From: Mytilus californianus
Lineage: Eukaryota
Reading direction: 5' to 3'
Assembly: GCF_021869535.1 (NCBI RefSeq)
Contig: NW_026262712.1
Location: 78,988,001-79,052,000, forward strand
Length of the DNA stretch: 64,000 nucleotides
Below, in pieces: positions 1-50,465 of this stretch (position 1 is its first letter; the number at the start of each line of letters is the position of its first letter). The position numbers and the translations under genes were made by a program. The notes beneath the pieces were generated by a model, which was given only the letters and a program-made list of their open reading frames with translations, was not told the DNA's origin and did not search any database.

Positions 1-689
1 CAAGCCCAGAAATAGGACAAAGTAAGGAGATATTGAGGATTGGAATACAATAGATATAACAAGGACTAGAACGCCTATAGTTACTGCCTACTACTATCTG
101 TACATGTCTTTTATCATGTGTTCTACTTTTATGACACATGGTCTAGAACGGCAAGGTGGGAGTTTGTGTGCGTTTAAAACTGGATTAACCCAAACACATT
201 TTGTGCATTTACCAAATCCGGTTTTTAATTACCTTGCGTTGTTCGTTGTTTCTATTTGTTTGTATGTCCTTTTTTTTGGAGGAGACGGGTGTGGATGGTT
301 ATGTTATGATTTGTTTTTGTGCTGTACAATATTTTTATTAATTCCTGTCGTCCTGTTTATATTTTATTATCTGCACAGGAAACATTAAGAGTGTTTTTAA
401 ACGAAAACAATCAAAGATGCATGCCTACAAAGGAGTTTTAATTAGCTTATTGTGTTTATTGGCAACGATCTTTAAGATTGCTGTCACAAACAAATTTTAT
501 TAAAGTAACAATGCCATTTTTCGGTTGCGACAGGAACAGAATTAATATTGATTAATCGCAAATTAGTTGCGCAATCATGAGACGGTTTACTTCTAACTGC
601 AAGTGCAAATCTAATATATTTCCCATTTACATGGTACTCTGACAATTCATTTCTCTATTGTTTAACATTAATAGATCAACTGCTTATAA

Positions 690-3817: not shown

Positions 3818-3891
3818 GTTTTATTATACCGAAAGAGACAACAGACACAAAGTTATGCCAAGGACTGAACAACACAGCTGACCAAAATCCA

Positions 3892-4864
3892 TTTTTGTCT
3901 CGCCTTGACGGAGTCAAAAAGCGAGACATAGGTATGCTGTTTCCGGCGTCGCCGTCAACAATGTATTAGTTTGTGATTATGTCTAGTTCATAGTGAACCA
4001 CTAGTGGTAGGTCAATGATATTTAGTATGCAGTTGTATTAGCATTGGCACATCTCATTACCATGGAGATTATTTGGCCTTGCCCCCTCAGTCAAGGTCTA
4101 CTGACTTTGAAAATTTTCATAGTTTACATGTATTAGTTTGTGATTAGGTCAATTTATGGGGAACCACTAGTGGTAGGTCAATGATATTTGGTATGCAGTT
4201 GTATAAGCATTGGCATATCTCATTTCCATGGAGATTATTTTGCTCCGTCCCCTTAGTCATGGTCAAAATGTTGCTAAGTTAACATGTATTAGTTTGTGAT
4301 TAGGTCAGTTCAAGGGGAACCATAAGTGGTAGGCCAATGCTAATTGGTGTTCAGTTGTATAAGCATTAGCACATCTCATTTCCATGTAGAATATTTGGCC
4401 CCGGCCCCTCAGTCATGGTCTTTTTTATTTGAAACTTTTGCTTAGTTTACATGTATTAGTTTGTGATTAGATCAGTTTAAGATGAACTGCTAATGTTATG
4501 TCAATGATATTTGGTATGCAAATTTATTGGCATTTGCAAGTATCGTTTCCATGGAGATTATATAGCCCCACCCTTGATCATGGTTCATTGACTTTGAAAA
4601 TTTTTACATAGTTTACAAGTTAAGGTTTGTGTTTAGGTTTGTTTAAAGGGAACGACTTATAATAAGTCAATGGTGTTTGGTATGCAGTTGTATTAGCATT
4701 GGCACATCTCATTCCATGAAGATTGTTCAGCCATGTACCTTCAGTCATGGTTCATCGACTTTGAATATTTGCATAACTTACATGTTAAAGTATTGCTATT
4801 TTAATTTCAACATTTGCATTATCAAAATAACAAAAAGGCGAGACATATCTCTGTGATAACAGTT
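3892..4864 (+). mobile_element. Helentron-type non-autonomous element (HINE/DINE-1/pearl-like) with internal tandem array
   Basis: 5' subTIR tttttgtctcgcc plus nearby inverted copy gcgagaca (3921-3928); 3' subTIR aaaaaggcgagaca (4832-4845) followed by hairpin ctgt-gata-acag; five units of about 156-167 bp starting at 3961, 4128, 4284, 4451 and about 4617. Confidence 0.8.
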
Positions 4865-5539: not shown

Positions 5540-5813
5540 TGTGTTTTTGATTGACAATGAGACAATTCTCCACCAGAGACCAAATGACGTTGAAGGTTAA
5601 CAATTATAGGTTACCGTACGGCCTTCAACAATGAGCAAAACCCATACCGCATAGTAATCTATTAAAGACCCCGAAATTGCAAGTGTAAAACAATTTAAAT
5701 GAGAATACTGATTATAACTGCTTGATTTATGTACAAAACAATAAAAACAAAAAAAAAGTACAGAAACAAAGGACAATCACTGAATTACAGGCTCCTGACA
5801 TGGGACAGGCATA
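5540..5813 (-). mobile_element. Family 4 element truncated inside the twister module
   Basis: Terminus motif plus P4/L4 cctgacatgggacagg (5794-5809), after which homology ends. Confidence 0.7.
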
Positions 5814-6964
5814 TATTGTTTCCTTCGTATTAATTTATTCTTGTAGTTATACTTGACGAGTTCATTAATAAAACATGTTTACACTAACATGTAAAAGCTT
5901 TTAAAAATAAAATGTAATTTAATAGCTCAGAAGTAGTGGCTTGTGTTTGATGTTGAGATAATATAAACCGTAATGCAATAATAAACCAGAATCCGTAGAT
6001 AAATGTAACCTTAATTCTGTATGAACCTTTGTTCAGTTACTATTCAAAATGTATCCACTGAAAAAAATATCAATCCTCCTCTACGACTTCTAGTTGTCTA
6101 AATAATGATCAAAACTTAAACGGAACTGAAAAACGAACAGACAAAACGGTATGTCACCTTCCTTACTCTCTTGAGCGGAGCATAACACTTTTGTCCCCTG
6201 TTAAATTATAAATGCAAAACTGCATTCCAAATAATATTACAAATAGTCACATAACTCAGTTCAATATTCATATTTTAATTCTTTCGCTATAATCAACTTA
6301 TTACAAACTTTGTCGTAGCCCATGTGATATATGTCTGGACCTTGGCGCTTGAGCAAATTATCTAATGATAAAAGGGAAGCCAAATAATATTAATATGTAC
6401 GCTGTGAATCACGCTATTCCCTATGCTAACAAAGTTTGATAACTGATTTACTTGTTTTTCTTTAATTGGTCTGATCTCTAGACACAAAGAAGCCGTATAG
6501 AGCAAATCAAGTTGTAAAGATGGCGACTTAAAATTGGACCGCCCCAATCAGTTATTCAATCAATTGATGAAAGAATTTATATCAAGATATAAAGTAAACC
6601 ATTTTGTGTATGCGTTTTAAATAGATATTTAAATGCTATAAGATTCTATGAACAGCAAAACATTTCAGAAAATAATTTATATTGTCATATTAAAGCTTTA
6701 GAATAATATCGAACATTGCAATTATGAAATAACTGAAATTGAAAGTAGTTGATACTGTACATGTATATTCCGTGATGAAACTATAATCCAGGATTAAAGG
6801 TAAAAAGATTACAGTGCGGTCGTGATAATCCCCGCGATAATCGGTCAACAAAATTGTAAATTATACATTATTATGAGTATTAAATGGTACGTATAATAAC
6901 ATACATGACCATCAGGTGAATGACCAGATGATATCACCATCCCGTCACAGGATAAATATAAGTA

Positions 6965-7520
6965 GATATAAAATATTGAGATGTGAAATGATTGCCAAGG
7001 AGACAACTATCCAAAATTAAAAAAACGACGAAGTTGTTAGCAACTAACATTCACCGTGCGGCCTTCAGAAATTAGCAAACTCCGCACCACATAACAAGTT
7101 ATAAAAGGCCCCGACATGACAAATTTTAAACTATTCAACAAAACAACAAACAAATAAATTAAACAAATATGTACAGCACCAAACGACAAGCATTGACTTA
7201 CATGCTCCTTACTTTGGACAGGCACATACCAAATGATGCGGGGTTTGACATGTTTATAGAAGCCCAGTCCTCCCCTATGCTGGGATAGTCGTATAACAGC
7301 ACAACGTAAGAACGAATTATAAAAATCAAATGAAAAGGGCTTCACGCATCAGATAGATACAACGAACAAAAACAACTAACAAAAGTTAACACTAACGAAA
7401 TAAAGTACCGATTTGAAAGTACTCGCAGTTATTGAATGTTAGTTCAAAACCAATAACACTTAAAGAAAAACTCACACTTCCAAGACAAAATATCAATCAG
7501 TACACATCCAATAGATTTAG
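6965..7520 (-). mobile_element. Family 4 element with decayed twister module (7201-7282)
   Basis: Same terminus and internal motifs as 45625-46045. Confidence 0.7.
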
Positions 7521-8369: not shown

Positions 8370-8680
8370 CAAAAAGGAGATGTGGTATGATTACCAATGA
8401 CAAAACTATCCTCAAAAGACCAAAGGAAATGGATGTAAACAACTACAGGTAACCGTACAGCCTTCAGCAATGAACAAAACCATTACCATAAAAACCCCTG
8501 TCATAACCAAATGAGAAACAATCATTGGAGAAAACCAACGACCTGCTTTATGATCAAAACATTTAATGATGAACAAAACCAGCACCCCTCAACCACCGAC
8601 AACCACTGAAAGGTTCATTAAGAATGCAGCGAGGTGAAACATGTTTGTGAGCGCTCAATTCTCCCCTAAACTTGAACATG
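8370..8680 (-). mobile_element. Family 4 element with P4/L4 of the twister deleted
   Basis: Terminus motif; retains aaacatgttt (8637-8646) and tgagcgctca (8648-8657) palindromes and ctcccct. Confidence 0.65.
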
Positions 8681-9790: not shown

Positions 9791-10273
9791 TTTAATTCGA
9801 TGAGAAATTTGACCTAACAGATTTTCTATATCATGCTGTTGTGATTGTTTTCACTTTTAGTTTTGTATCTTGTCACTTGATATAACACCTAGTAATCGGT
9901 ACAAATGTAGGTTGTTTCTAAAAACTTCACATGTTTACACATGCAGTAAAAAGGTTAAATCATTATTAGGATTATAATCATCCTCATTAATTTACCCGAG
10001 TTATTAATCTTTTTTTATTAGAAACTGATACACCTTGTGAACAACATGAATTTCGTGAGAATTAAAGAATTTGTCGTTCAAGAACGTTTTGCCTTATATG
10101 TCTGCCTTTTAGAAGCTTTTTCCAGTGAAGTTCATGTAGAACGTTTATTGTTTTATTAATATTTCCGGTTATCAAATTTGGAATTAATTTTAAATAAAGG
10201 AACGTATCTCCCTCTTGCATAGCGCTGTTGTCCTTGTCCGGGTTAAGTTTTACTTTTGGTCCTTTTTGACATC

Positions 10274-10655
10274 AATTTCCCCCCATCTTAGCAGCAATAT
10301 ACCAACTTCACCTGCATATGGGATATACATTTCCCAACTCATTCGGTATTCAAGAGCTTGCAGCTGTTACTCAGACTTTGTAAAACTTCACCAGTGTCTG
10401 AGCAGATGGTTGATGAACCAGGTTTAATATGTCAAAGAACGTCTCGTTCTTTTTCTAAAAAAGTTCATCGGAAGATACCAAGACATTGTTGATAAATATT
10501 CCGTATCAACTTCACAAATAGTTCATGGTGGTCTTTGAGTATAGATTCTAGGTACTGACGTTGTCTATCATCTTAATTACGTATTATAGTGTTCTTTTTA
10601 TTTGTCTTTGTATATTTTTAACCTTTACTGTTTAGTCCATTTTAGGTACATACTT
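10274..10655 (+). mobile_element. PLE family 2 RT C-terminal fragment plus start of 3' UTR
   Basis: NFPHLSSNIPTSPAYGIYISQLIRYSRAC...[frameshift]...YVKERLVLFLKKFIGRYQDIVDKYSVSTSQIVHGGL* (stop about 10536-10538). Confidence 0.85.
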
Positions 10656-17366: not shown

Positions 17367-17465
17367 AACTGTTATATAAGTGGAAGGTTTATCTAGTTAT
17401 AAAACTAGGTTTAACCCACCATTTTCTTCGTAAAATGTCTCTGCCAAGTAAGAAATATGGCAGTT
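17367..17465 (+). ncRNA. Decayed twister-like module, likely inactive
   Basis: P5 AACUGUUAUA/UAUGGCAGUU is kept, but the catalytic GA reads AA and P4 is disrupted. Confidence 0.6.
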
Positions 17466-23770: not shown

Positions 23771-24480
23771 AAAAGTAAAACAACAAAATTACCGAACTCC
23801 AAGGAAAATTCAAAACCGAAAGTCCCTAATCAAATTGCAAAATCAAAAACTTAAACACATCAAACGAATGGAAAAACACTTGTCATATTCCTGACTTGGT
23901 ACAGACATTTCCTTATGTAGAAAATGGTGGATAAAACCTGGTTTGATAGCTAGTTAAACACTCTCGCATTGAATTCCATTATATTGACAACAATGTGTGA
24001 GCAAATTAAACTTTAAGACATAATAGATAAAAATGTGAAAATTTGGGGTACAGCAGTCACAGTTGTGTTATAATCTTAATCACTATAAAAAACCCAACTA
24101 TGTCAACAAATAAAAACAAAATTGCATATAGAAACTCTATAAACAAAGCACATAAGCAAAAATGAAAGACAAAAATACATACAAAAAATGACCATAGCAC
24201 AATAACCAATAACACTATGGCGGGATGTATGAATACATAGCCACGCTAAAAGGATATTACCAAAAATAGACTAAACAGTAAAGTATAAAAATGTACAAAG
24301 ACAAATAAAAAGAACACTATAACACGTAATTAAGATGATAAACAACGATAGTACTTAGAATCTATACTTCCAAGACCATTATCTATTATTTGTGAAGTTG
24401 ATACAGAATATTTATCAACAAGGTCTTGGCATCATCCGATGTAGTTTGTTAGAGGGGTTTAAAGACAGACATCTTTTTAC
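23771..24480 (-). mobile_element. PLE family 2 3' end: RT C-terminus, 3' UTR and twister module
   Basis: The reverse complement of 24290-24470 aligns with 10450-10620; it continues into the ACC/GGU twister module (23881-23968) and the ttttgttgttttactttt terminus. Confidence 0.85.
23881..23968 (-). ncRNA. Decayed twister-like module in the PLE family 2 3' UTR
   Basis: L4 UACCAAGU, P4 UCUG/CAGG and P3 are present; the cleavage-site UAA reads UUA, T1 is disrupted and the 5' P5 arm is missing. Confidence 0.6.
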
Positions 24481-26295: not shown

Positions 26296-27310
26296 AATAA
26301 AATTGAGTATGGAAATGGGGAATGTGTCAAAGAGACAACAACCCGACCATAGAGCAGACAACAGCCGAAGGCCACCAATGGGTCTTCAATGCAGCTAGAA
26401 ACTCCCGCACCCGGAGGCGTCCTTTAGCTGGCCCCTAAACAAATATGTATACTAGTTGAGTGATAATGGACGTCATACTAAACTCCAAATTATACACAGG
26501 AAACTAAAATTAAAAATGAAACAAGACTAACAAAGGCCAGAGGCTACTGACCTGGGACTGGCGCAAAAATGCGGCGGGGTTAAACATGTTTTTTGAGATC
26601 TCAACCCTCCCCCTATACCTCTAGCCAAAAAATGTAGAAAAAAAAACCGCACAACAGTACGCACAGTAAAACTCAGTATAAGAGAAGTCCAAGTCCGATG
26701 TCAGAATGGGAAACAAAAGAAAATAAACAAAATGACAATAATACATAAATAACAACAGACTACTAGCAGTTACTGACATGCCAGCTCCAGACCTCAATTA
26801 AACTGTTTGAAAGATTATGTCTTCATCATATGAATATCAGGCATAATCCCTCCTGTTAGGGGTTTAGTATTATACCGTCATAAAATATATGAGAAGAACA
26901 TAACCCGTGTCATGCTAACAACTAGTTTTAAAATAAATGTGTTTAGTTCAGATGCAAAGACCCTATAAGTGAATCAATATTAAAGCCAAAATATGCAATC
27001 TTTAATGACCTGACAACAATATCCCTTCTTAATAAGTCTGTTTAAAGGTTTATTAGCTTTTGAGGTGAATACTGACATTTTTGTGCTTTGTAAAGTATAT
27101 TACCATAAAAGATTGGATGTGAAATACCCGAACGTATAAGATGTCTGCATGTTGAGTTATATTTACGAATGATGTCCTTATACCGATGATAAAATTTAGT
27201 AAATGTTTTGACTAGTTTATGGTATTGAAAATTCTGGTGTAATAATTTTTCAGTAATACATAAATTTCTCTTGCTGAAATTCAATACGTTGTTACATACA
27301 CGAGCGAATA
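26296..27310 (-). mobile_element. Second, shorter 5'-truncated copy of PLE family 1
   Basis: Closely similar to 48837-49860: RT C-terminus (NLCITEKLLHQNFQYHKLVKTFTKFYHRYK) plus the full 3' UTR, same 3' end (aataaaattgag on +). Confidence 0.9.
26535..26626 (-). ncRNA. Type P5 twister-like ribozyme in the second family 1 copy (P4/L4 mutated)
   Basis: Same fold as 49071-49162; T1 CCC/GGG intact, L4 UCCCAGGU, P4 CCAG/CAGU weakened. Confidence 0.7.
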
Positions 27311-35158: not shown

Positions 35159-35550
35159 TTAAATAAAGACAACAGTAGTATACCGCTGTTAAAAATTCAT
35201 AAATCGATTGAGAAAAAAACAAATCCGGGCTACAAACTAAAACTGAGGGAAACACAAAAAATATAAGAGGAGAACACAGACACAACAGACACACTAAAAT
35301 GCAACACACACAGAAACGAACTATAAGATAACGATAGCAATTTTCCTGACTTGGTACAGGACATTTAAGAAAAAATGGTGGGTTGAACCTGGTTTTGTGG
35401 CTAGCCAAACCTCCCGCTTTAATGGCAATGTTAAATATAACACTAAAATGACAACATCACATGACAGGACTACAATACAAATATATAGAAGAACATACAG
35501 GACAGAGAAACTCACAAATAAACAATACAATAGAACATTACGACAAGCTA
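35159..35550 (-). mobile_element. Twister-bearing non-autonomous element (aaataaagacaacagtagtata terminus)
   Basis: Homologous to 43473-44030. Confidence 0.75.
35335..35430 (-). ncRNA. Type P5 twister-like ribozyme (ACC/GGU subfamily), core intact, P5 decayed
   Basis: GCGG-GA-GGU-UUGGCUAGCCACAAAACCAGGUU-CAA-CCC-ACC-P3-G-UCCUG-UACCAAGU-CAGGA. Confidence 0.7.
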
Positions 35551-36937: not shown

Positions 36938-37232
36938 TATGTACCCCTATTTGTGACATTTTTACCTATTATGTCTGTTTGTTTTGTTCACACAATGTTG
37001 CCAATATAAGGGAGTTTTATGCGACTGTCATACAAGTGAGAGGTTTAGCTAGCTATAAAACAAGGTTTAATCCACCATTTTCTACATAAAGAAATGCCTG
37101 TACCAAGCCAGGAATGTGACAGTTGTTTTCCATTCGTGTGATGTGTTTAAGTTTTTGATTTTGCAATTTGATAAGGGACTTTCCGATTTGAATTTTCCTT
37201 GGAGTTTGGTATTTTTGTTATTTTACTTTTAA
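36938..37232 (+). mobile_element. PLE family 2 3'-UTR fragment with twister
   Basis: Reverse complement of 23771-24060; related fragments at about 17330-17570, 31415-31555, 48160-48240 and 51505-51641. Confidence 0.8.
37024..37123 (+). ncRNA. Type P5 twister-like ribozyme (ACC/GGU subfamily), near intact
   Basis: P5 ACUGUCAUA/UGUGACAGU, GUGA-GA-GGU, U^AA (37068/37069), UCC-ACC, P3 AUUU..AAAU, G, P4 CCUG/CAGG, L4 UACCAAGC. T1 is ACC/GGU; one T2 pair is A.C. Confidence 0.75.
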
Positions 37233-43472: not shown

Positions 43473-44030
43473 AATAAAGGCAACAGTAGTATATCGGTGT
43501 TCAAAAGACATAAATCGATTGAGAGAAAACAACTGCTATATTCCTGACTTGGTACAGGACATGTTAAGAAAAAATGGTGGGTTGAACCTTGTTTTATGGC
43601 TAGCAAAACCTCCCGCTCACATGGCAATGTTTAAAAATATATCGCTAAAATGACAACACTACGTGGACAGAAATACAGCACAAACACTCATCACAGAGAA
43701 ACGCACAAACAAATAATATAGTCGACATACCATGCAAACCGCAGAACAACAGCGAACATCTTCTATCAACGACAGACACTACAGGACATCACAAACAGTG
43801 ACGCACTTACGTACAAACATGCAATCTCGAACATTATACAATTATTTTCGCAAAACCAGTTCAAACAATTTTCATGACAATGATGGAATTGAAAGGCTAT
43901 TTTATAATCATTTGGACTACAAACGATAAGACATAACACATTATCTAACCGAAACCATAACAGAAACATAAAAAATAAATACATGAATGTTGGATGTACA
44001 AAATACCGAGACACGTCGAATAGCAATGCA
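43473..44030 (-). mobile_element. Twister-bearing non-autonomous element, same family as 35159-35550
   Basis: Shared terminus, twister module and upstream segment. Confidence 0.75.
43532..43628 (-). ncRNA. Type P5 twister-like ribozyme (ACC/GGU subfamily), near intact, C^A site
   Basis: P5 AUUGCCAUG/UAUAGCAGU, GCGG-GA-GGU, CAA-CCC-ACC, P4 UCCUG/CAGGA, L4 UACCAAGU (T2 A-U, C-G). Confidence 0.75.
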
Positions 44031-45340: not shown

Positions 45341-45560
45341 AATAAAATTGAGAATGGAAATGGGAAATGTGTCAAAGAGACAACAACCCGACCAAAGAGC
45401 AAAAACATCCCAAGGCCATCACTGGGTTTTCAATGCAGAGAGACAATCCCGCACTTAACTCCGAAACATAAAAATGAGCAAAAATTAAAAAAAAAAAAAA
45501 CAACATACAAGACTAACAAAGGCTAGAGGTTCCTGACTTTGGACAGGCGCAAAAATGCGG
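45341..45560 (-). mobile_element. Internally deleted 3'-end fragment of PLE family 1
   Basis: Same 3' terminus and 3' UTR; homology stops at 45560, inside the twister module. Confidence 0.8.
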
Positions 45561-45624
45561 TACCCTATAATGTATTTACAATTGTTAACATAATGTATCA
45601 TATTTCTATCAAGATTATAATAGT

Positions 45625-46045
45625 ATAGATATAAGAAGATGTGGTATGAGTGCCAATGAGACAACTCTCCATCCAAGTCAAAATTAAACCATTATAGGTC
45701 ACAGTACGGTCTTCAACACGGAGCTTTGTCTCACACCGAACAGTAAGCTATAAAGGGCCCCAAAAAAATACTAGTGTAAAACCAATCAAACGGGAAAACC
45801 AACGGTCTAATCTATATAAAAAACGAGAAACGAGAAACGAGAAACACTTATGAACCACATCAACAAACGACAACTACTGAACATCAGATTCCTGACTTAG
45901 GACAGGTGCAAACAAATGCAGCGGGTTTAAACGTTTTAATGGTACCAAACCTTCACCCTTTTTCTGAAACAATAGTGTAACATCACAACATAGAAAGACA
46001 CACTATAAAATATCAACTGAAATAGCTTAACTCAATCAAAAGACA
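45625..46045 (-). mobile_element. Non-autonomous PLE-like element, family 4 (aagatgtggtatga terminus), carrying the intact twister
   Basis: Terminus aagaagatgtggtatgagtgccaatgagacaact is shared with copies near 5380, 5540, 6975, 8375, 33410, 41025, 43130, 46440 and 52530. Confidence 0.75.
45884..45967 (-). ncRNA. Type P5 twister-like self-cleaving ribozyme, apparently intact (best copy)
   Basis: UCAGA-AAAA-GGGU-GA-AGG-[UUUGGUACCAUUAAAACGUU]-U^AA-ACCC-GCU-GCA(UUUGUU)UGC-A-CCUG-UCCUAAGU-CAGG-AA-UCUGA. P5 UCAGA/UCUGA, P2 ACCC/GGGU, P3, P4 CCUG/CAGG, T1 CCU/AGG, T2 GC/GU. Predicted cut between 45929 and 45928. Confidence 0.85.
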
Positions 46046-46134
46046 TATTAACACCATTGAACATACACTGAACAAATAAATTTGACCTATGACACAATGT
46101 AAATACAAAAATAAAAAAAAAATAGGTTCACTTA

Positions 46135-46330: not shown

Positions 46331-47028
46331 TAGATCAGTTCGATATTTTGCTATGATGCTCCATCATAAGAATTTAGGTTAAGGTAATTGTAAAATGTTC
46401 AAGTGTTTTAAGATCAGTAATTCAAATATGAACAAAAGGAGATGATGGTATATATGTGTCAATGAGACAGTAACATGAAGACCTTAAAACATTTTAAAAA
46501 CTAAAAGACAAATCAAAATAATATTAGCAGGCAGTTAATACGATATGCCAAGCTCTAAAGTGCGTTGAAATGTTATAAACAGATTTATTACATTTAACAT
46601 AGACTATCAAAGATCTGCCATACATACCGGATCATACCGAATCCCTCTCAGAAAATAAAGCATTGATATAACACAAAACACAACAAAGCAAGTTCCTGAC
46701 TAAGAATAGGCATACAATCATGTGATGGGACTAATCTATTCGACCATTGGACTAATTCAAGATATATAAAAGAACATATAATTACAATTATATCACTAAA
46801 CTCACTTTACCCTTACATAGCGGTATGAAAAATAACAAAAATAAAATAGTAAACGAAACAATAATAAACATTACAGTACCGAGAATGCCCGCAGTTACTT
46901 ACTAGTAATGAAGGAAATAAAGTGGACCTTAGATGAGTTTGTCTATTCTTTTTAGGTTCCTTCTGGTCATACAACTTCTTACGTTTCTACGTATTTATAC
47001 ATCCAATGCTTTCAAACGTTTAGGTTGA

Positions 47029-47271: not shown

Positions 47272-48130
47272 GATTAACGCCCACAAGGTTAGTTCGAGAC
47301 CTTTCTAGATTGAGGTCCACAAGGTGTGCTCGAGACTTTTCTAGATTAACATCCATGACCTTTCTAGATTAACGTCCACAAGGTATGCTCGAGACCTTTC
47401 TAGATAAACGTCCACAAGGTATGCTCAAGACCTTTCTAGATTAACGCCCAAAAAAGTATGCTCGAGACCTTCCTAGATTAATGTCCACAAAGTATGTTCG
47501 AGATCTTTCTAGCACAAGGTATGCTTGAGACATTGCTAGATTAACCTTCACAAGCTTAATGTATAATCGAGACCTTTCTAAATTAACGCCCACAAGGTAT
47601 GCCCGAGACCTTTCTAGATTAACGTCCACAAGGTATGCTCGAGACCTTGCTAGATTAACTTTCACAAGCTTGATGTATGATCGAGACTTTCTAGATTAAA
47701 ACCCACATAATATGCTTTAGACCTTTCTCGATAAACGCCCACAAGGTATGCTCGAGTCCTTTCTAGAATAACGTCCACAAGGTATGCTCGAGACCTTAAT
47801 AGATAAACGTTCAAAATGTATGCTCGAGATCTTTCTAGATAAACGTACACAAAGTATGCTCAAGACCTTTCTAGATTAACATCCACAAGGTATGCTTGAG
47901 ACCTTGCTAGATTAACTTTCACAAGCTTAATGTATGATGGAGACCTTTCTAGATTAACGCCCACAAGGTATGCTCGAGACCTTTCTATATTAACGTCCAC
48001 CAGGTATGCTCGAGACCTTTCTAGACTAACTTCCACTAGCTTAAGGTATGCTCGATACTTTTCTAGATTAACGTCCACAGGGTATTCTCGAGACTTTTCT
48101 AGATAAGTGCCATTAGGTATGCCCGGGACC
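47272..48130. repeat. 36-bp minisatellite, about 23 units
   Basis: Consensus acaaggtatgctcgagacctttctagattaacgtcc with recurrent 42-bp variant units. Confidence 0.95.
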
Positions 48131-48836
48131 AAAAGAGTCGGCTCTAAACGGTAAAAAGTTAATTTTGATTTTGCTATTTGATAAGAGACCTACCGTTTTG
48201 AATTTTCCTTGGAGTTCGGTATTTTTGTTATTTTACTTTTTACGTCGTTTATTTTTGTTTGTAATCAGTGTAAAACTATTTTTATATTTTGGTTTGATCT
48301 GTTTTATTTACTGTAAATCTTGTTTTCCCTTTTAATGTTTTATTTAAAAGTGATACGTAATATGGTAATTATAAGGTTGCTACACTATATCAATTTATAC
48401 TCTATCCCTAGCATGCTTTACTACAAGTAATCAGTATGAAAACAGATTTAGTTGTATCGTTAGGGTCAGATCATTTAACAGCAAAGGGGATCATACTTTT
48501 TATTGTATTATTAAATATTTATCTTTGACCTGTAGTTAACACCTTTTACAAAGCCATATTAGATATATGTATAATTAAACTCAAATCTCAAGAATAAATA
48601 ATTACAAGATAAGTTTTTATGTATCAGAATCGTATAAATTAGCCATCCTTGATACACGCACTATGTCATTGTAATTATAACTCACGCTACAAAGAAGCGG
48701 GAGAGGGTATATAGTTTTTGATCCGTGTTTCAGTCAGTCCGTCATTCATTTTTGTTTGCGGGTGCTCACTCAAATAATGTATATCCGATTGCTACCATGC
48801 TTGGCAATTTGATCACATATAATAAGAGGAAGGTCA

Positions 48837-50465
48837 ATAAAATTGAGAATGGAAATGGGGAATATGTCAAAGAGACAACAACCCGACCAAAGAGCAGACA
48901 ACAGCCGAAGGCCATCAATGGGTCTTCAACGCAGCGAGAAAATCCCGCACCCGGAGGTGGTCCTCAGCTGGCCCCTAAATTAAATTGTGTACTAGTTCAG
49001 TGAAAATGGACGTCACACTAAACTCCAAAATATATATAACTAAAATTAAAAGACATACAAGACTAACAAAGGCCAGAGGCTACTGACTTAAGACAGGCGC
49101 AAAAATGCGGCGGGGTTAAACATGTTTTATGAGATCTCAACCCTCCCCCTATACCTCTAGCCAATGTAGAATAAAGAAACACATAGCAATACGCACAGTA
49201 AAACTCAGTTCAAAAGAAGTCCGAGTCCGATGTCAGAATAGGTAACAAAAGAAACTAAGCAAAATGAAAATGATACATAAATGAACAAAGGACTACTAGC
49301 AGTTACTGACATGCCAGCTCCAGACCTCAATTAAACTGATTGAAAGATTATGTCTTCATCATATGAAAATCAAGTACAATCCCTCCCGTTAGGGGTTTAG
49401 TATCATACCATCATAAAATATATGAGAAGAACATAACCCGTATCATGCCAACAACTGGTTTTAGAATAAATGTGTTTATTTCCGATGCAAAGACCCTATG
49501 AGTGAATCAATATTAATACCAAAATATTCAATCCTTAATGTCTTGACAACAGTATCGTAACTATATCCTTTCCGAATAAGTCTGTTTAAAGGTTTGGTTA
49601 GCTTTTGAAGTGAATGCCGACATTTTTTTGCTTTGTAAAGAATATTACCATAAAATATTGGATGTAAAATACCTGAACGCATAAGATGTTTGCATGTTGA
49701 TTTATATTTACGAATGATGTCATTGTACCGATGATAAAATTTAGTAAATGTTTTGACTAGTTTGTGATATCGAAAACCCTGGTGTAATAGTTTTTCAGTA
49801 ATACAGAGATTTATTTCGTTGAAATCAAATACGCTGTTACATACACGTGCTAATCGAACGAGTTGAGATATATAAACACCCTAAGATGGCGACAAGGGAA
49901 CGTCACCATCTAAAAATGGATAATTAAAAATAGGAAATGAACAATCATCTCTTTTATCATAAATTTTGGTATTAAGCTTCCCGTTAAAGATAAAGATATC
50001 AAGATCCAGGAAAGGGCAGTGTTCATTGTTAGTATTAGCTTTATTTAAAGTCAGTTCGGCAGGATAAATCTCTTTAGTGTACATACTGAAGTCGTCATTA
50101 TTGAGAGCCAATATATCATCTAAATATCTAAAAGTGTTATTAAATTATTGATTCAAATGTTGTTTCGATGGGTCTTTGCTGATTTTAGTCATAAATTGTA
50201 ACTCATAACAATACAGAAACAGGTCCGCAATCAGTGGTGCACAATTATTCCCCATGGGAATTCCGATAACCTGACGATATACGGAATCTCCATTGCGAAC
50301 AAAAATGTTATCTAGTAAAAATTCAAGGGCAGTTATAGTATCAAAGCAGGTCCAATTGGCATAGTTCTTTTGTTTGTTGTTACTAAAAAATGACCTAAAA
50401 GAGTTTGAACATATATATTTGCATTCCGACTTTTTAAATGCCCATTTAATCAAATGTGTACAGGA
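48837..50465 (-). mobile_element. 5'-truncated Penelope-like retroelement, family 1 (C-terminal RT, Naiad-like), with twister module in the 3' UTR
   Basis: One frame reads ...YRQVIGIPMGNNCAPLIADLFLYCYE...FRYLDDILALN...CPFLDLDI...KIYDKRDD...GVYISQL...KLLHQGFRYHKLVKTFTKFYHRY...SLHRK* (ends 49476), with in-frame TAA (50145) and TAG (49881). No GIY-YIG follows the RT. The 3' UTR is about 640 nt. Confidence 0.9.
49071..49162 (-). ncRNA. Type P5 twister-like ribozyme in the PLE family 1 3' UTR (slightly decayed)
   Basis: P5 GGCUAGAGGU/GCCUCUGGCC (10 bp), P2 CCCC/GGGG, GA-GGG, UAA, GCC-GCAUUUUUGC-G, P4 CCUG/CAGU, L4 UCUUAAGU. Predicted cut 49118/49117. Confidence 0.75.

What the first reader, a model, noticed from the sequence alone, without database searches (positions are those of the whole stretch)
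48837..50465. C-terminal-RT (Naiad-like) Penelope-like element uses a twister in its 3' UTR instead of a hammerhead
Seen: the PLE-type RT ORF ends at 49476 with no GIY-YIG after it, and a P5 twister lies about 315-405 nt downstream on the same strand; the copy at 26296-27310 repeats this layout. Established: canonical PLEs carry hammerheads in their pLTRs, while N-terminal-endonuclease Naiad/Chlamys PLEs were described as lacking canonical hammerheads. Inference: twister is the missing RNA-processing ribozyme of this clade. The N-terminal endonuclease is not visible here because the copies are 5'-truncated.
Basis: partly seen in the sequence, partly recalled or inferred. Interest (0 to 1): 0.92.

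Follow-up and report, generated by a model that had tools for sequence, protein, structure and literature searches.

The report
Twister-like ribozyme motif in Naiad retroelements
A broken copy of a selenoprotein-coding Naiad (Penelope-like) retrotransposon carries, after its selenocysteine signal, an RNA motif with the full architecture of a twister self-cleaving ribozyme, and related elements conserve that fold, so this clade, described as lacking hammerheads, may use a twister, though cutting has not been shown.

Summary
On the minus strand, a 5'-truncated RT (50459-49479, two in-frame stops) ends at 49476. A SECIS-like hairpin follows (49424-49360), then a 92-nt twister-like motif (49162-49071, predicted cut U49118/A49117). 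The copy at 26296-27309 repeats this layout.

Full-length relatives from metagenomes have an N-terminal GIY-YIG, a CxC linker, a DKA motif and in-frame UGA codons at conserved cysteine columns. These match the selenoprotein Naiads of Craig et al. 2021.

Rfam does not call a twister in the window, and relatives reach only 20-24 bits. However, 26 of the 27 related loci with at least 450 nt of sequence after the RT carry the motif on the RT strand. Helices P2, P3, P4 and both pseudoknots covary: 93% of cells paired against 31-49% in slid controls.

No cis P1 helix exists; two covarying palindromes sit in its place. Both window copies next to RT fragments are mutated in the motif core. An intact copy of a sister family lies at 45880-45969.

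RNA-seq shows no efficient cleavage. I found no paper linking twister to Penelope-like elements. First-stage notes elsewhere in this genome flag the same motif, unchecked.

Verdict: a real, conserved twister-class fold and a new variant; catalysis and role are inferred.

The parts
49479..50459 (-). 5'-truncated Naiad RT, C-terminal third of the ORF. In-frame stops at 50145-50147 (TAA) and 49881-49883 (TAG); terminal stop at 49476-49478.
   Evidence: tblastn against the L003 ORF, residues 686-1011, 87% identity; frame translation; alignment with relatives.
49360..49424 (-). SECIS-like hairpin with AUGA...AAA...GA core, 52 nt after the stop codon.
   Evidence: Rfam SECIS_1 at 32.2 bits against a gathering score of 35. 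The same element sits at the same relative place in relatives, above gathering in L044 and L045 at 39.0 and 37.4 bits.
49071..49162 (-). Twister-like motif, type-P5 permutation. P5 49162-49154 with 49080-49071; P2' 49149-49146; GAGGG 49145-49141; palindrome 1 49138-49131; palindrome 2 49127-49118; predicted cut U49118/A49117; P2 49115-49112; GCC 49111-49109; P3 49108-49099; P4 49097-49095 with 49084-49082; L4 49094-49085.
   Evidence: Manual mapping; model R1 at 88.3 bits; fold recovers P5, P3 and P4. This copy departs from the family majority at 49082, 49090 and 49091, which lie in P4 and the T1 letters of L4.
48837..49070 (-). 3' tail of the element, from the motif to the sharp 3' end of the insertion.
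   Evidence: blastn to L003 ends at 48836. Loose ends of reads and contigs pile up at 48836-48838 with AT-rich flanks.
26296..27309 (-). Second, shorter copy of the same family. RT 27308-26946, SECIS-like 26891-26827, motif 26626-26535 (L4 and P4 mutated), tail to 26296.
   Evidence: (79.4 bits).
45624..46088 (-). 5'-truncated 3' end of a sister family (L010-like) with an apparently intact motif at 45969-45880: P2 GGGU/ACCC, T1 AGG with CCU, palindrome UGGUACCA.
   Evidence: Model R1 at 89.6 bits; parse; blastn to L010 4048-4502 at 84%.

Best explanation
The locus is a dead, 5'-truncated insertion of a selenoprotein-coding Naiad, a Penelope-like element with an N-terminal GIY-YIG endonuclease and a C-terminal RT. 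Its 3' UTR holds two RNA modules: a SECIS just after the stop, which recodes the in-frame UGA codons of the ORF, and about 300 nt further on a twister-class motif in the P5-open permutation.

Shown: the motif's fold (P2, P3, P4, P5 and pseudoknots T1 and T2) is maintained by selection across elements as divergent as 42% amino-acid identity. Intact members keep the conserved twister letters: UAA at the cleavage site, GCC, GAGGG, and the L4 loop GUCCCAAG.

Shown: full-length relatives lie head to tail in tandem, so each ORF has a motif on both sides.

Inferred: the motif self-cleaves between U and A, cutting read-through or multimeric transcripts to unit length. This is the role proposed for hammerheads in canonical PLEs.

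Inferred: because the cis P1 helix is replaced by two self-complementary stretches next to the cut site, cleavage is probably slow or conditional, perhaps needing RNA-RNA pairing as PLE hammerheads need dimers. That would explain why bulk RNA is uncut.

The two window copies next to RT fragments are mutated in P4 and L4 and are probably inactive.
For: Naiad identity. Reading UGA as Sec gives ORFs of about 970-1080 aa in ten relatives. UGA falls at Cys-aligned columns before the GIY-YIG motif, in CxC, and 8 aa after DKA. These are the positions described in PMC8557442. Pfam GIY-YIG gives a weak hit.

SECIS. Hits lie at the same relative position in 9 sequences; two are above gathering.

Motif distribution. 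It is present on the RT strand, starting 271-902 nt after the end of the RT match or gene, in 26 of the 27 loci with at least 450 nt of downstream sequence, and also in a second genome assembly.

Rfam. Twister models give only sub-threshold hits, but they fall exactly at the motif: L039 24.1 bits, L013 21.4, L025 Twister-P5 21.1, L008 20.3, L044 and L045 20-21. UAA, GAGGG and L4 align to the model consensus.

Covariation. 93.2% of cells are paired against 72.4% in shuffles and 31-49% in slid controls. The covariation score is 0.55 against at most 0.09. Twelve of 15 pairs change on both sides, including T1 and T2, which were not part of the model used for alignment.

Tandem units of 3988-4645 nt, with a motif on both sides of the ORF in L016.

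Palindromes. One perfect palindrome in 18 of 18 families and two in 13 of 18; 0.15% of random segments have two. PLE hammerheads likewise have a palindromic stem III loop and act as dimers (PMC6765202). Naiads lack canonical hammerheads (PMC8557442), and none was found here at E<=10.
Against: No cleavage was demonstrated. With three raw RNA-seq runs laid at 85% likeness or more, no position in 48800-49700 shows a pile-up of molecule ends, and depth is continuous across 49117/49118 in both mate directions. Yet 89-97% of reads carry the canonical L4 and P4 letters. The test is weak, because reads come from thousands of copies on both strands and the listing threshold is a fifth of local depth.

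The motif fails the Rfam gathering scores, and there is no cis P1.

In 6 of 18 families palindrome 2 also covers A+1, so pairing it would bury the cut site.

Genomic copies run through the motif to a fixed 3' end 283 nt downstream. The RNA templates that were inserted were therefore uncut at that motif.
Confidence: 0.6

Rival explanations
1. The twister-type fold is conserved as a structural 3' UTR module rather than as a working ribozyme. It could be a handle recognised by the Naiad RT for target-primed reverse transcription, or an RNA dimerisation or packaging site that uses the two palindromes. Cleavage would be absent or incidental.
For: Short RT-less copies and a roughly 290-nt element family keep exactly the motif plus the tail, as non-autonomous elements keep the 3' module their RT needs. 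Inserted copies contain an uncut motif followed by 283 nt. RNA-seq shows no cut. The palindromes resemble dimer-linkage sites (the resemblance is inference).
Against: The twister fold is known only as a ribozyme. The letters at and around the scissile bond (U, A, A), the GA of GAGGG and the AAG of L4 are nearly invariant, while helices drift with compensation. A mere protein handle would not need this.
Confidence: 0.25
2. The motif belongs to a separate short non-autonomous repeat that happens to sit in, or was captured by, the 3' UTR of some Naiads. On this view it is not an integral part of the autonomous element.
For: About 11 of 14 motif copies in the window have no RT next to them. Five belong to a roughly 290-nt element.
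Against: 26 of the 27 RT-bearing relatives with at least 450 nt of downstream sequence have it at a consistent place and on the same strand, and it diverges in step with the RT, with distinct P2, T1, T2 and palindrome versions per family. RT-less copies align to the 3' UTRs of full-length relatives, so they are truncations or derivatives.
Confidence: 0.07
3. The twister resemblance is a chance match or a decayed relic with no conserved structure.
For: No Rfam hit in the window at all. The window copies carry core mutations.
Against: Model hits reach E values down to 1e-23. Covariation is seen in five helices, including both pseudoknots. Slid and shuffled controls fall far below the observed values.
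Confidence: 0.03

Closest known systems
Twister ribozyme, type P5 (Rfam RF02684, clan CL00120)
   Same: Same order of elements: P2' - GAGGG - (P1 region) - U^AA - P2 - GCC - (P3) - P4 with loop GUCCCAAG.C - P5 closing stem. Both pseudoknots T1 and T2 are supported by compensatory changes. The Rfam models align UAA, GAGGG and L4 correctly in relatives.
   Different: No cis P1 hairpin; two perfect palindromes occupy its place. A P3 hairpin is always present, and it costs score in the Twister-P5 model alignment. The T2 pair varies (G.U, A-U, C-G, G-C), where the Rfam twister consensus shows G and C at these positions. Scores of 20-24 bits fall below gathering (37.6 and 67.2). Activity is untested.
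Hammerhead ribozymes in the pseudo-LTRs of canonical Penelope-like elements (Cervera and de la Pena 2014; Lunse et al. 2017, as reviewed in PMC6765202)
   Same: A small self-cleaving-ribozyme motif sits in the terminal region of a tandemly arranged PLE. A palindromic stretch lies at the closed helix next to the cut site. Cleavage is expected to be slow or dependent on dimers.
   Different: A different ribozyme class (twister, not hammerhead) and a different PLE clade (N-terminal EN Naiads, reported to lack canonical hammerheads, PMC8557442).
T-variant twisters at the 5' end of Perere-3 (RTE non-LTR) elements in Schistosoma mansoni (PMC8501958); truncated twisters in RTE 5' ends (PMC7761336)
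   Same: A twister-class motif with a weak or absent P1, used by a retrotransposon.
   Different: Those are type P1 and sit at the element's 5' end, where cleavage defines the 5' end of the RNA. Here the motif is type P5, lies in the 3' UTR 283 nt before the 3' end, and belongs to a PLE, not a LINE.
Selenoprotein-coding Naiads of clams and spiders (Craig et al. 2021, PMC8557442)
   Same: N-terminal GIY-YIG, CxC, DKA. UGA at the Cys before GIY-YIG and 8 aa after DKA. SECIS at or just after the stop.
   Different: That paper reports no ribozyme; it searched only for hammerheads. Here up to 6 UGA codons occur per ORF, including the first Cys of CxC. Many more families appear in a mollusc genome and in marine metagenomes.

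Membership tests
Twister ribozyme (Rfam clan CL00120) | Conserved core letters: U-A-A at the cut site, GCC, GAGGG, L4 GUCCCAAGCC | tested here: met
   Intact relatives (L003, L005, L008, L013, L022) keep all of them except one L4 letter, which pairs in T2 and covaries. Window copy 1 differs at 3 further core positions and copy 2 at 3.
Twister ribozyme (Rfam clan CL00120) | Helices P2 and P4 (plus optional P3 and P5) supported by covariation | tested here: met
   P2 91%, P3 98% and P4 96% of cells paired, with 9 of 10 pairs changing on both sides. P5 is recovered by folding in 10 of 10 sequences.
Twister ribozyme (Rfam clan CL00120) | Double pseudoknot T1 and T2 | tested here: met
   T1 86% and T2 96% of cells paired, with compensatory changes (GGG:CCC, AGG:CCU, GGA:UCC; G-C, A-U, C-G, G.U). 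These pairs were not in the model that made the alignment.
Twister ribozyme (Rfam clan CL00120) | P1 helix flanking the cleavage site | tested here: not met
   The stretch after GAGGG is not complementary to the stretch before U-1. Two separate palindromes occupy the region. P1 is reported to be dispensable, at a cost in cleavage rate (PMC8501958).
Twister ribozyme (Rfam clan CL00120) | Score at or above the Rfam gathering threshold | tested here: not met
   No hit in the window. Relatives score 20.2-24.1 bits against gathering scores of 37.6 (P5) and 67.2 (P1).
Twister ribozyme (Rfam clan CL00120) | Site-specific self-cleavage | tested here: inconclusive
   RNA-seq shows no pile-up of ends and no dip at 49117/49118. 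The test mixes strands and thousands of copies. No biochemical test is possible with these tools.
Naiad clade of Penelope-like elements | N-terminal GIY-YIG endonuclease with a C-terminal RT and nothing after it | tested here: met
   Alignment of ten full-length relatives shows the GIY-YIG motifs near the N-terminus. Pfam PF01541 scores 21.2 bits on an L024 piece, against a cut-off of 22.6. ORFs end 10-25 aa after the RT/thumb region. The window copies lack the N-terminus through truncation.
Naiad clade of Penelope-like elements | CxC linker motif and DKA (not DKG) motif | tested here: met
   SCNC or T-U-D-C in the linker; PADKA(A/S)NN in all ten relatives. The definition comes from PMC8557442.
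Naiad clade of Penelope-like elements | Placement of the RT inside the Naiad clade on a PLE tree | not tested
   No reference PLE sequences were available: the paper's supplements are not held. Pfam RVT_1 and PDB searches gave nothing.
Naiad clade of Penelope-like elements | No canonical hammerhead; tandem or pseudo-LTR arrangement | tested here: met
   No hammerhead hit at E<=10 in the window slices or in the 16 related loci scanned with Rfam. Contig start matches contig end over 55-282 nt at 95-100% identity, giving units of 3988-4645 nt.
Selenoprotein-coding Naiads | In-frame UGA at conserved Cys positions, plus a SECIS in the 3' UTR | tested here: met
   2-6 UGA codons per ORF at aligned columns, matching. 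SECIS_1 scores 29-39 bits at or just after the stop. The window's RT fragment lies downstream of the last UGA column, so only its SECIS can be seen.

The most novel reading that the evidence does not exclude
A P1-less twister gated by palindromes (dimer-dependent or otherwise conditional) is the unit-length RNA-processing ribozyme of SECIS-bearing Naiads and of their very abundant short derivatives. That would make it one of the commonest ribozyme motifs in mollusc genomes and the first twister tied to a Penelope-like element. Cleavage would leave an RNA whose 3' end is a perfect palindrome. Such ends could pair two RNAs end to end and seed the tandem and inverted copy arrangements typical of PLEs.
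Probability: 0.3. Interest if true: 0.9.

Novelty: new variant of a known kind. Interest (0 to 1): 0.78.

Why it matters
Canonical Penelope-like elements all carry hammerheads. The Naiad/Chlamys clade was reported to lack them, which left open whether a ribozyme is needed for the PLE life cycle at all. A conserved twister-class fold at the equivalent place suggests the requirement may be general and met by a different ribozyme class.

The finding would extend twister biology from LINE 5' ends to PLE 3' UTRs. It shows a natural twister architecture without a cis P1, which Rfam models miss. It also gives a testable case of conditional, possibly dimer-dependent, cleavage.

In addition, it shows that selenoprotein-type Naiads with a SECIS are far more widespread than the four families described. 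That matters for annotating mollusc repeats and ORFs that are interrupted by UGA.

Tried and rejected
- Rfam at gathering score, and at E<=10 on slices of 901, 2001 and 161 nt of the window, gave no twister. Absence of a hit was not taken as absence of the motif, because relatives gave sub-threshold hits at the right place.
- Pfam on the three RT pieces and on the RT parts of relatives gave no RVT_1. PDB phmmer gave nothing. RT identity therefore rests on motifs and on the Naiad diagnostics.
- I looked for a cis P1 and found none.
- One continuous dimer duplex that uses both palindromes at once is not possible for two antiparallel strands (inference). The dimer geometry is left open.
- Idea: short copies start at the cut site, which would be a footprint of cleaved templates. 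Three window copies begin 5-21 nt after it. One of them looks like an internal deletion, and DNA loose ends show no top-ranked peak there. Not conclusive.
- I tried to separate twister from SECIS using Naiads with Cys at DKA+8 (L044, L045). They still carry a SECIS above gathering, so the separation failed.
- L024 is the only relative with long downstream sequence and no motif or SECIS. This is unexplained; the contig may be rearranged.
- The supplements of Craig et al. are not held. Roth 2014 and Lunse 2017 are also not held. Four of 11 contig look-ups returned no DNA.

Full report
**Observation**

The coding part is on the minus strand. One frame reads from about 50459 down to 49479. It has in-frame stops at 50145-50147 (TAA) and 49881-49883 (TAG), and its terminal stop is at 49476-49478.

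tblastn with a full-length relative places this stretch at residues 686-1011 of a 1012-aa ORF, at 87% identity. A second fragment, 27308-26946, covers residues 888-1012. Both copies are therefore 5'-truncated. Nothing resembling an endonuclease follows the RT, and relatives end 10-25 aa after the same point.

The candidate motif lies at 49162-49071 on the same strand, 314-405 nt after the stop. The predicted scissile bond is U49118/A49117. The copy at 26296-27309 repeats the layout.

**What the element is**

A search with the C-terminal RT piece found thousands of relatives, but the best 150 listed are all fragments of at most 442 aa. A scan of metagenome contigs returned 38 loci at 42-83% identity.

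When UGA is read through, ten loci give ORFs of about 970-1080 aa with 2-6 in-frame UGA codons at aligned columns. The alignment shows:
- an N-terminal GIY-YIG domain;
- a CxC linker, whose first Cys is UGA in several families;
- the DKA motif, followed 8 residues later by UGA;
- a C-terminal RT.

Craig et al. 2021 define Naiads by the N-terminal GIY-YIG, CxC and DKA. They describe selenoprotein Naiads with UGA at the Cys before GIY-YIG and 8 aa after DKA, plus a SECIS at the stop. The match is exact. Pfam gives only a weak GIY-YIG hit on one piece and no RVT_1. I could not build a PLE tree because no reference sequences were available.

**SECIS**

Rfam SECIS_1 hits lie just after the stop:
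- in both window copies, at 32.2 and 33.3 bits against a gathering score of 35;
- in L001, L003, L005 and L032, at 29-32 bits;
- in L044 and L045, above gathering at 39.0 and 37.4 bits.

**The motif**

On the RNA strand the order is:
1. a 9-10 bp closing stem (P5);
2. a short A/U-rich joiner;
3. P2' (GGGG);
4. GAGGG;
5. UU;
6. an 8-10 nt palindrome;
7. 2-3 nt;
8. a second 8-12 nt palindrome that ends at U-1;
9. AA;
10. P2 (CCCC);
11. GCC;
12. a small P3 hairpin;
13. P4 (3 bp) closing the loop GUCCCAAGUC;
14. the other strand of P5.

This is the type-P5 circular permutation of twister with P3 present.

Rfam gives no twister hit in the window, even at E<=10 on 161 nt. In relatives, however, the twister models hit exactly this place at 20-24 bits. 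The alignments put UAA, GAGGG, P2 and the L4 loop on the model's conserved columns. In the Twister-P5 alignment, P3 appears as an insertion and the P1 hairpin region is skipped.

**Comparative support**

A pattern search and a covariance model built from seven relatives (P2, P3 and P4 only) find the motif in 27 of the 40 related loci (L001-L040), always on the RT strand. It is present in 26 of the 27 loci that have at least 450 nt of sequence after the RT; only L024 lacks it. It also lies about 270 nt after the ORF in a second genome assembly.

Helices change with compensation:
- P2 occurs as GGGG/CCCC, GUGG/CCAC, UAGC/GCUA, GGGC/GCCC, GGGA/UCCC, GGGU/ACCC and GAGU/ACUC.
- T1 occurs as GGG:CCC, AGG:CCU, GGA:UCC and GGU:ACC.
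- T2 occurs as G-C, A-U, C-G, G.U and U.G.

On the alignment of loci only, 93.2% of cells pair, against 72.4% in shuffles and 31-49% when partners are slid. The covariation score is 0.55 against at most 0.09. Twelve of 15 pairs change on both sides. With the window copies included, the figures are 89.7% and 0.47. T1 and T2 were not in the model that made the alignment, so their support is independent of fitting. Folding recovers P5, P3 and P4 in all ten sequences tested.

**P1 and the palindromes**

No cis P1 can be drawn. Every one of 18 distinct families has a perfect palindrome of 8-10 nt right after GAGGG-UU. Its sequence differs between families; examples are GAGAUCUC, GGCGCGCC, GGUGCACC, CUGUACAG and UGGUACCA. 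Thirteen of the 18 also have a second perfect palindrome that ends at U-1, or in six families at A+1. Random segments of the same composition show two such palindromes in 0.15% of trials.

Perfect self-complementarity, including the central pair, points to pairing between two RNAs rather than a hairpin (inference). Canonical PLE hammerheads have a palindromic stem III loop, are thought to work as dimers, and are very slow in vitro (PMC6765202). The parallel is striking, but the geometry here is unresolved.

**Genomic arrangement**

Ten related contigs begin and end with the same 55-282 nt at 95-100% identity, which implies head-to-tail units of 3988-4645 nt. In L016 a motif lies on both sides of the ORF.

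The DNA copies end at a fixed point 283 nt after the predicted cut.

The window holds about 14 motif copies from at least three families:
- An intact-looking one sits at 45969-45880, within a 5'-truncated 3' end of an L010-like family.
- Five belong to an element of roughly 290 nt.
- Only three RT fragments exist in the window.

Window copy 1 departs from the great majority of the genome's copies, and of RNA reads, at 49082, 49090 and 49091. These positions lie in P4 and in the T1 letters of L4. Copy 2 has other changes in the same parts.

**Test for cleavage**

Raw reads of three RNA runs and contigs of one DNA run were laid on 48800-49700 at 85% likeness or more.
- No place shows many molecules beginning or ending.
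- Depth is flat across 49117/49118 in both mate directions (for example 197 then 205, and 373 then 474, in X22).
- Reads carry the canonical L4 letters at 89-97%.

Most RNA containing the motif is therefore uncut at steady state. The test is weak. Reads come from both strands of thousands of copies embedded in other transcripts, 83-88% of reads match only in part, and only ends that reach a fifth of local depth are listed.

**Mechanism and rivals**

My best reading (0.6): this is a twister-class ribozyme motif that serves this Naiad clade as hammerheads are thought to serve other PLEs, cutting tandem or read-through transcripts to unit length. Activity would be conditional because P1 is replaced by the palindromes.
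- Shown: the element's identity, the SECIS, the conserved fold, and the tandem layout.
- Inferred: cleavage, its role, and gating.

Main rival (0.25): the fold is a non-catalytic 3' module for RT recognition or RNA dimerisation. This fits the uncut inserted copies, the RT-less derivatives and the RNA-seq result. It does not explain why the letters at the active site are invariant.

Capture of a separate short repeat (0.07) and chance resemblance (0.03) are poorly supported.

**What is known**

Twister variants sit at the 5' end of RTE-type LINEs in Schistosoma (PMC8501958; PMC7761336). Hammerheads sit in PLE pseudo-LTRs. Naiads are reported without canonical hammerheads (PMC8557442).

Four full-text searches found no paper that links twister to Penelope-like elements or to mollusc repeats. 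The library lacks most subscription journals, so this is not proof of absence.

First-stage notes on other pieces of this genome, and one on this window, flag the same motif; as shown, they are unchecked.

**Limits**

Every relative I could read also has a SECIS, so the claim cannot yet be extended to all Naiads or to Chlamys.

Noticed in passing
window 49360-49424 (-) and 26827-26891 (-): SECIS-like hairpins just under the Rfam gathering score, 52 nt after the RT stop. Together with the in-frame UGA codons in relatives, they mark the element as a selenoprotein-type Naiad.
   Followed up: yes
window 45880-45969 (-), 7196-7286 (-), 8594-8677 (-), 45521-45576 (-), 5783-5838 (-), 46684-46747 (-), 146-232 (+): Further copies of the twister-like motif without an adjacent RT. 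The copy at 45880-45969 looks intact; the others are decayed or truncated inside the motif.
   Followed up: partly
window 35334-35428 (-), 37025-37119 (+), 43536-43627 (-), 17368-17460 (+), 23883-23978 (-): A third motif family (T1 GGU with ACC; an A.G mismatch in the last P2 pair) carried by a short element of roughly 290 nt, running from about 84 nt before to 206 nt after the motif start. It is probably a non-autonomous derivative.
   Followed up: partly
all motif copies, e.g. window 49138-49131 and 49127-49118; L003 3380-3399: Two adjacent perfect palindromes replace twister P1. Their sequences differ between families but stay self-complementary. In six families the second one also covers the A after the cut site. 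Their function is unknown.
   Followed up: partly
L003, L004, L006, L010, L016, L017, L029, L032, L037, L039: These metagenome contigs start and end with the same sequence (55-282 nt, 95-100% identity), implying tandem head-to-tail units of about 4.0-4.6 kb. L039 also has an internal 271-nt direct repeat (3855-4125 and 4122-4392).
   Followed up: partly
protein hits: Most of the 120 best relatives of the RT part are called as ORFs of 430-490 aa, some standing for hundreds to thousands of member sequences. This is what gene callers produce when they stop at the UGA 8 aa after DKA, so selenoprotein-type Naiads appear very common in public assemblies.
   Followed up: no
window 47441-48132: A tandem repeat block whose units give long repetitive ORFs on both strands (for example VNLERSRAYLV...), lying just beside the element.
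   Followed up: no
window 10215-10535 (+): A weak third RT fragment, 33% identical to residues 838-940 of the L010 ORF.
   Followed up: no
L024 4345-5974: The only full-length relative with long downstream sequence but neither a SECIS hit nor the motif. The downstream DNA is AT-rich and unrelated.
   Followed up: no
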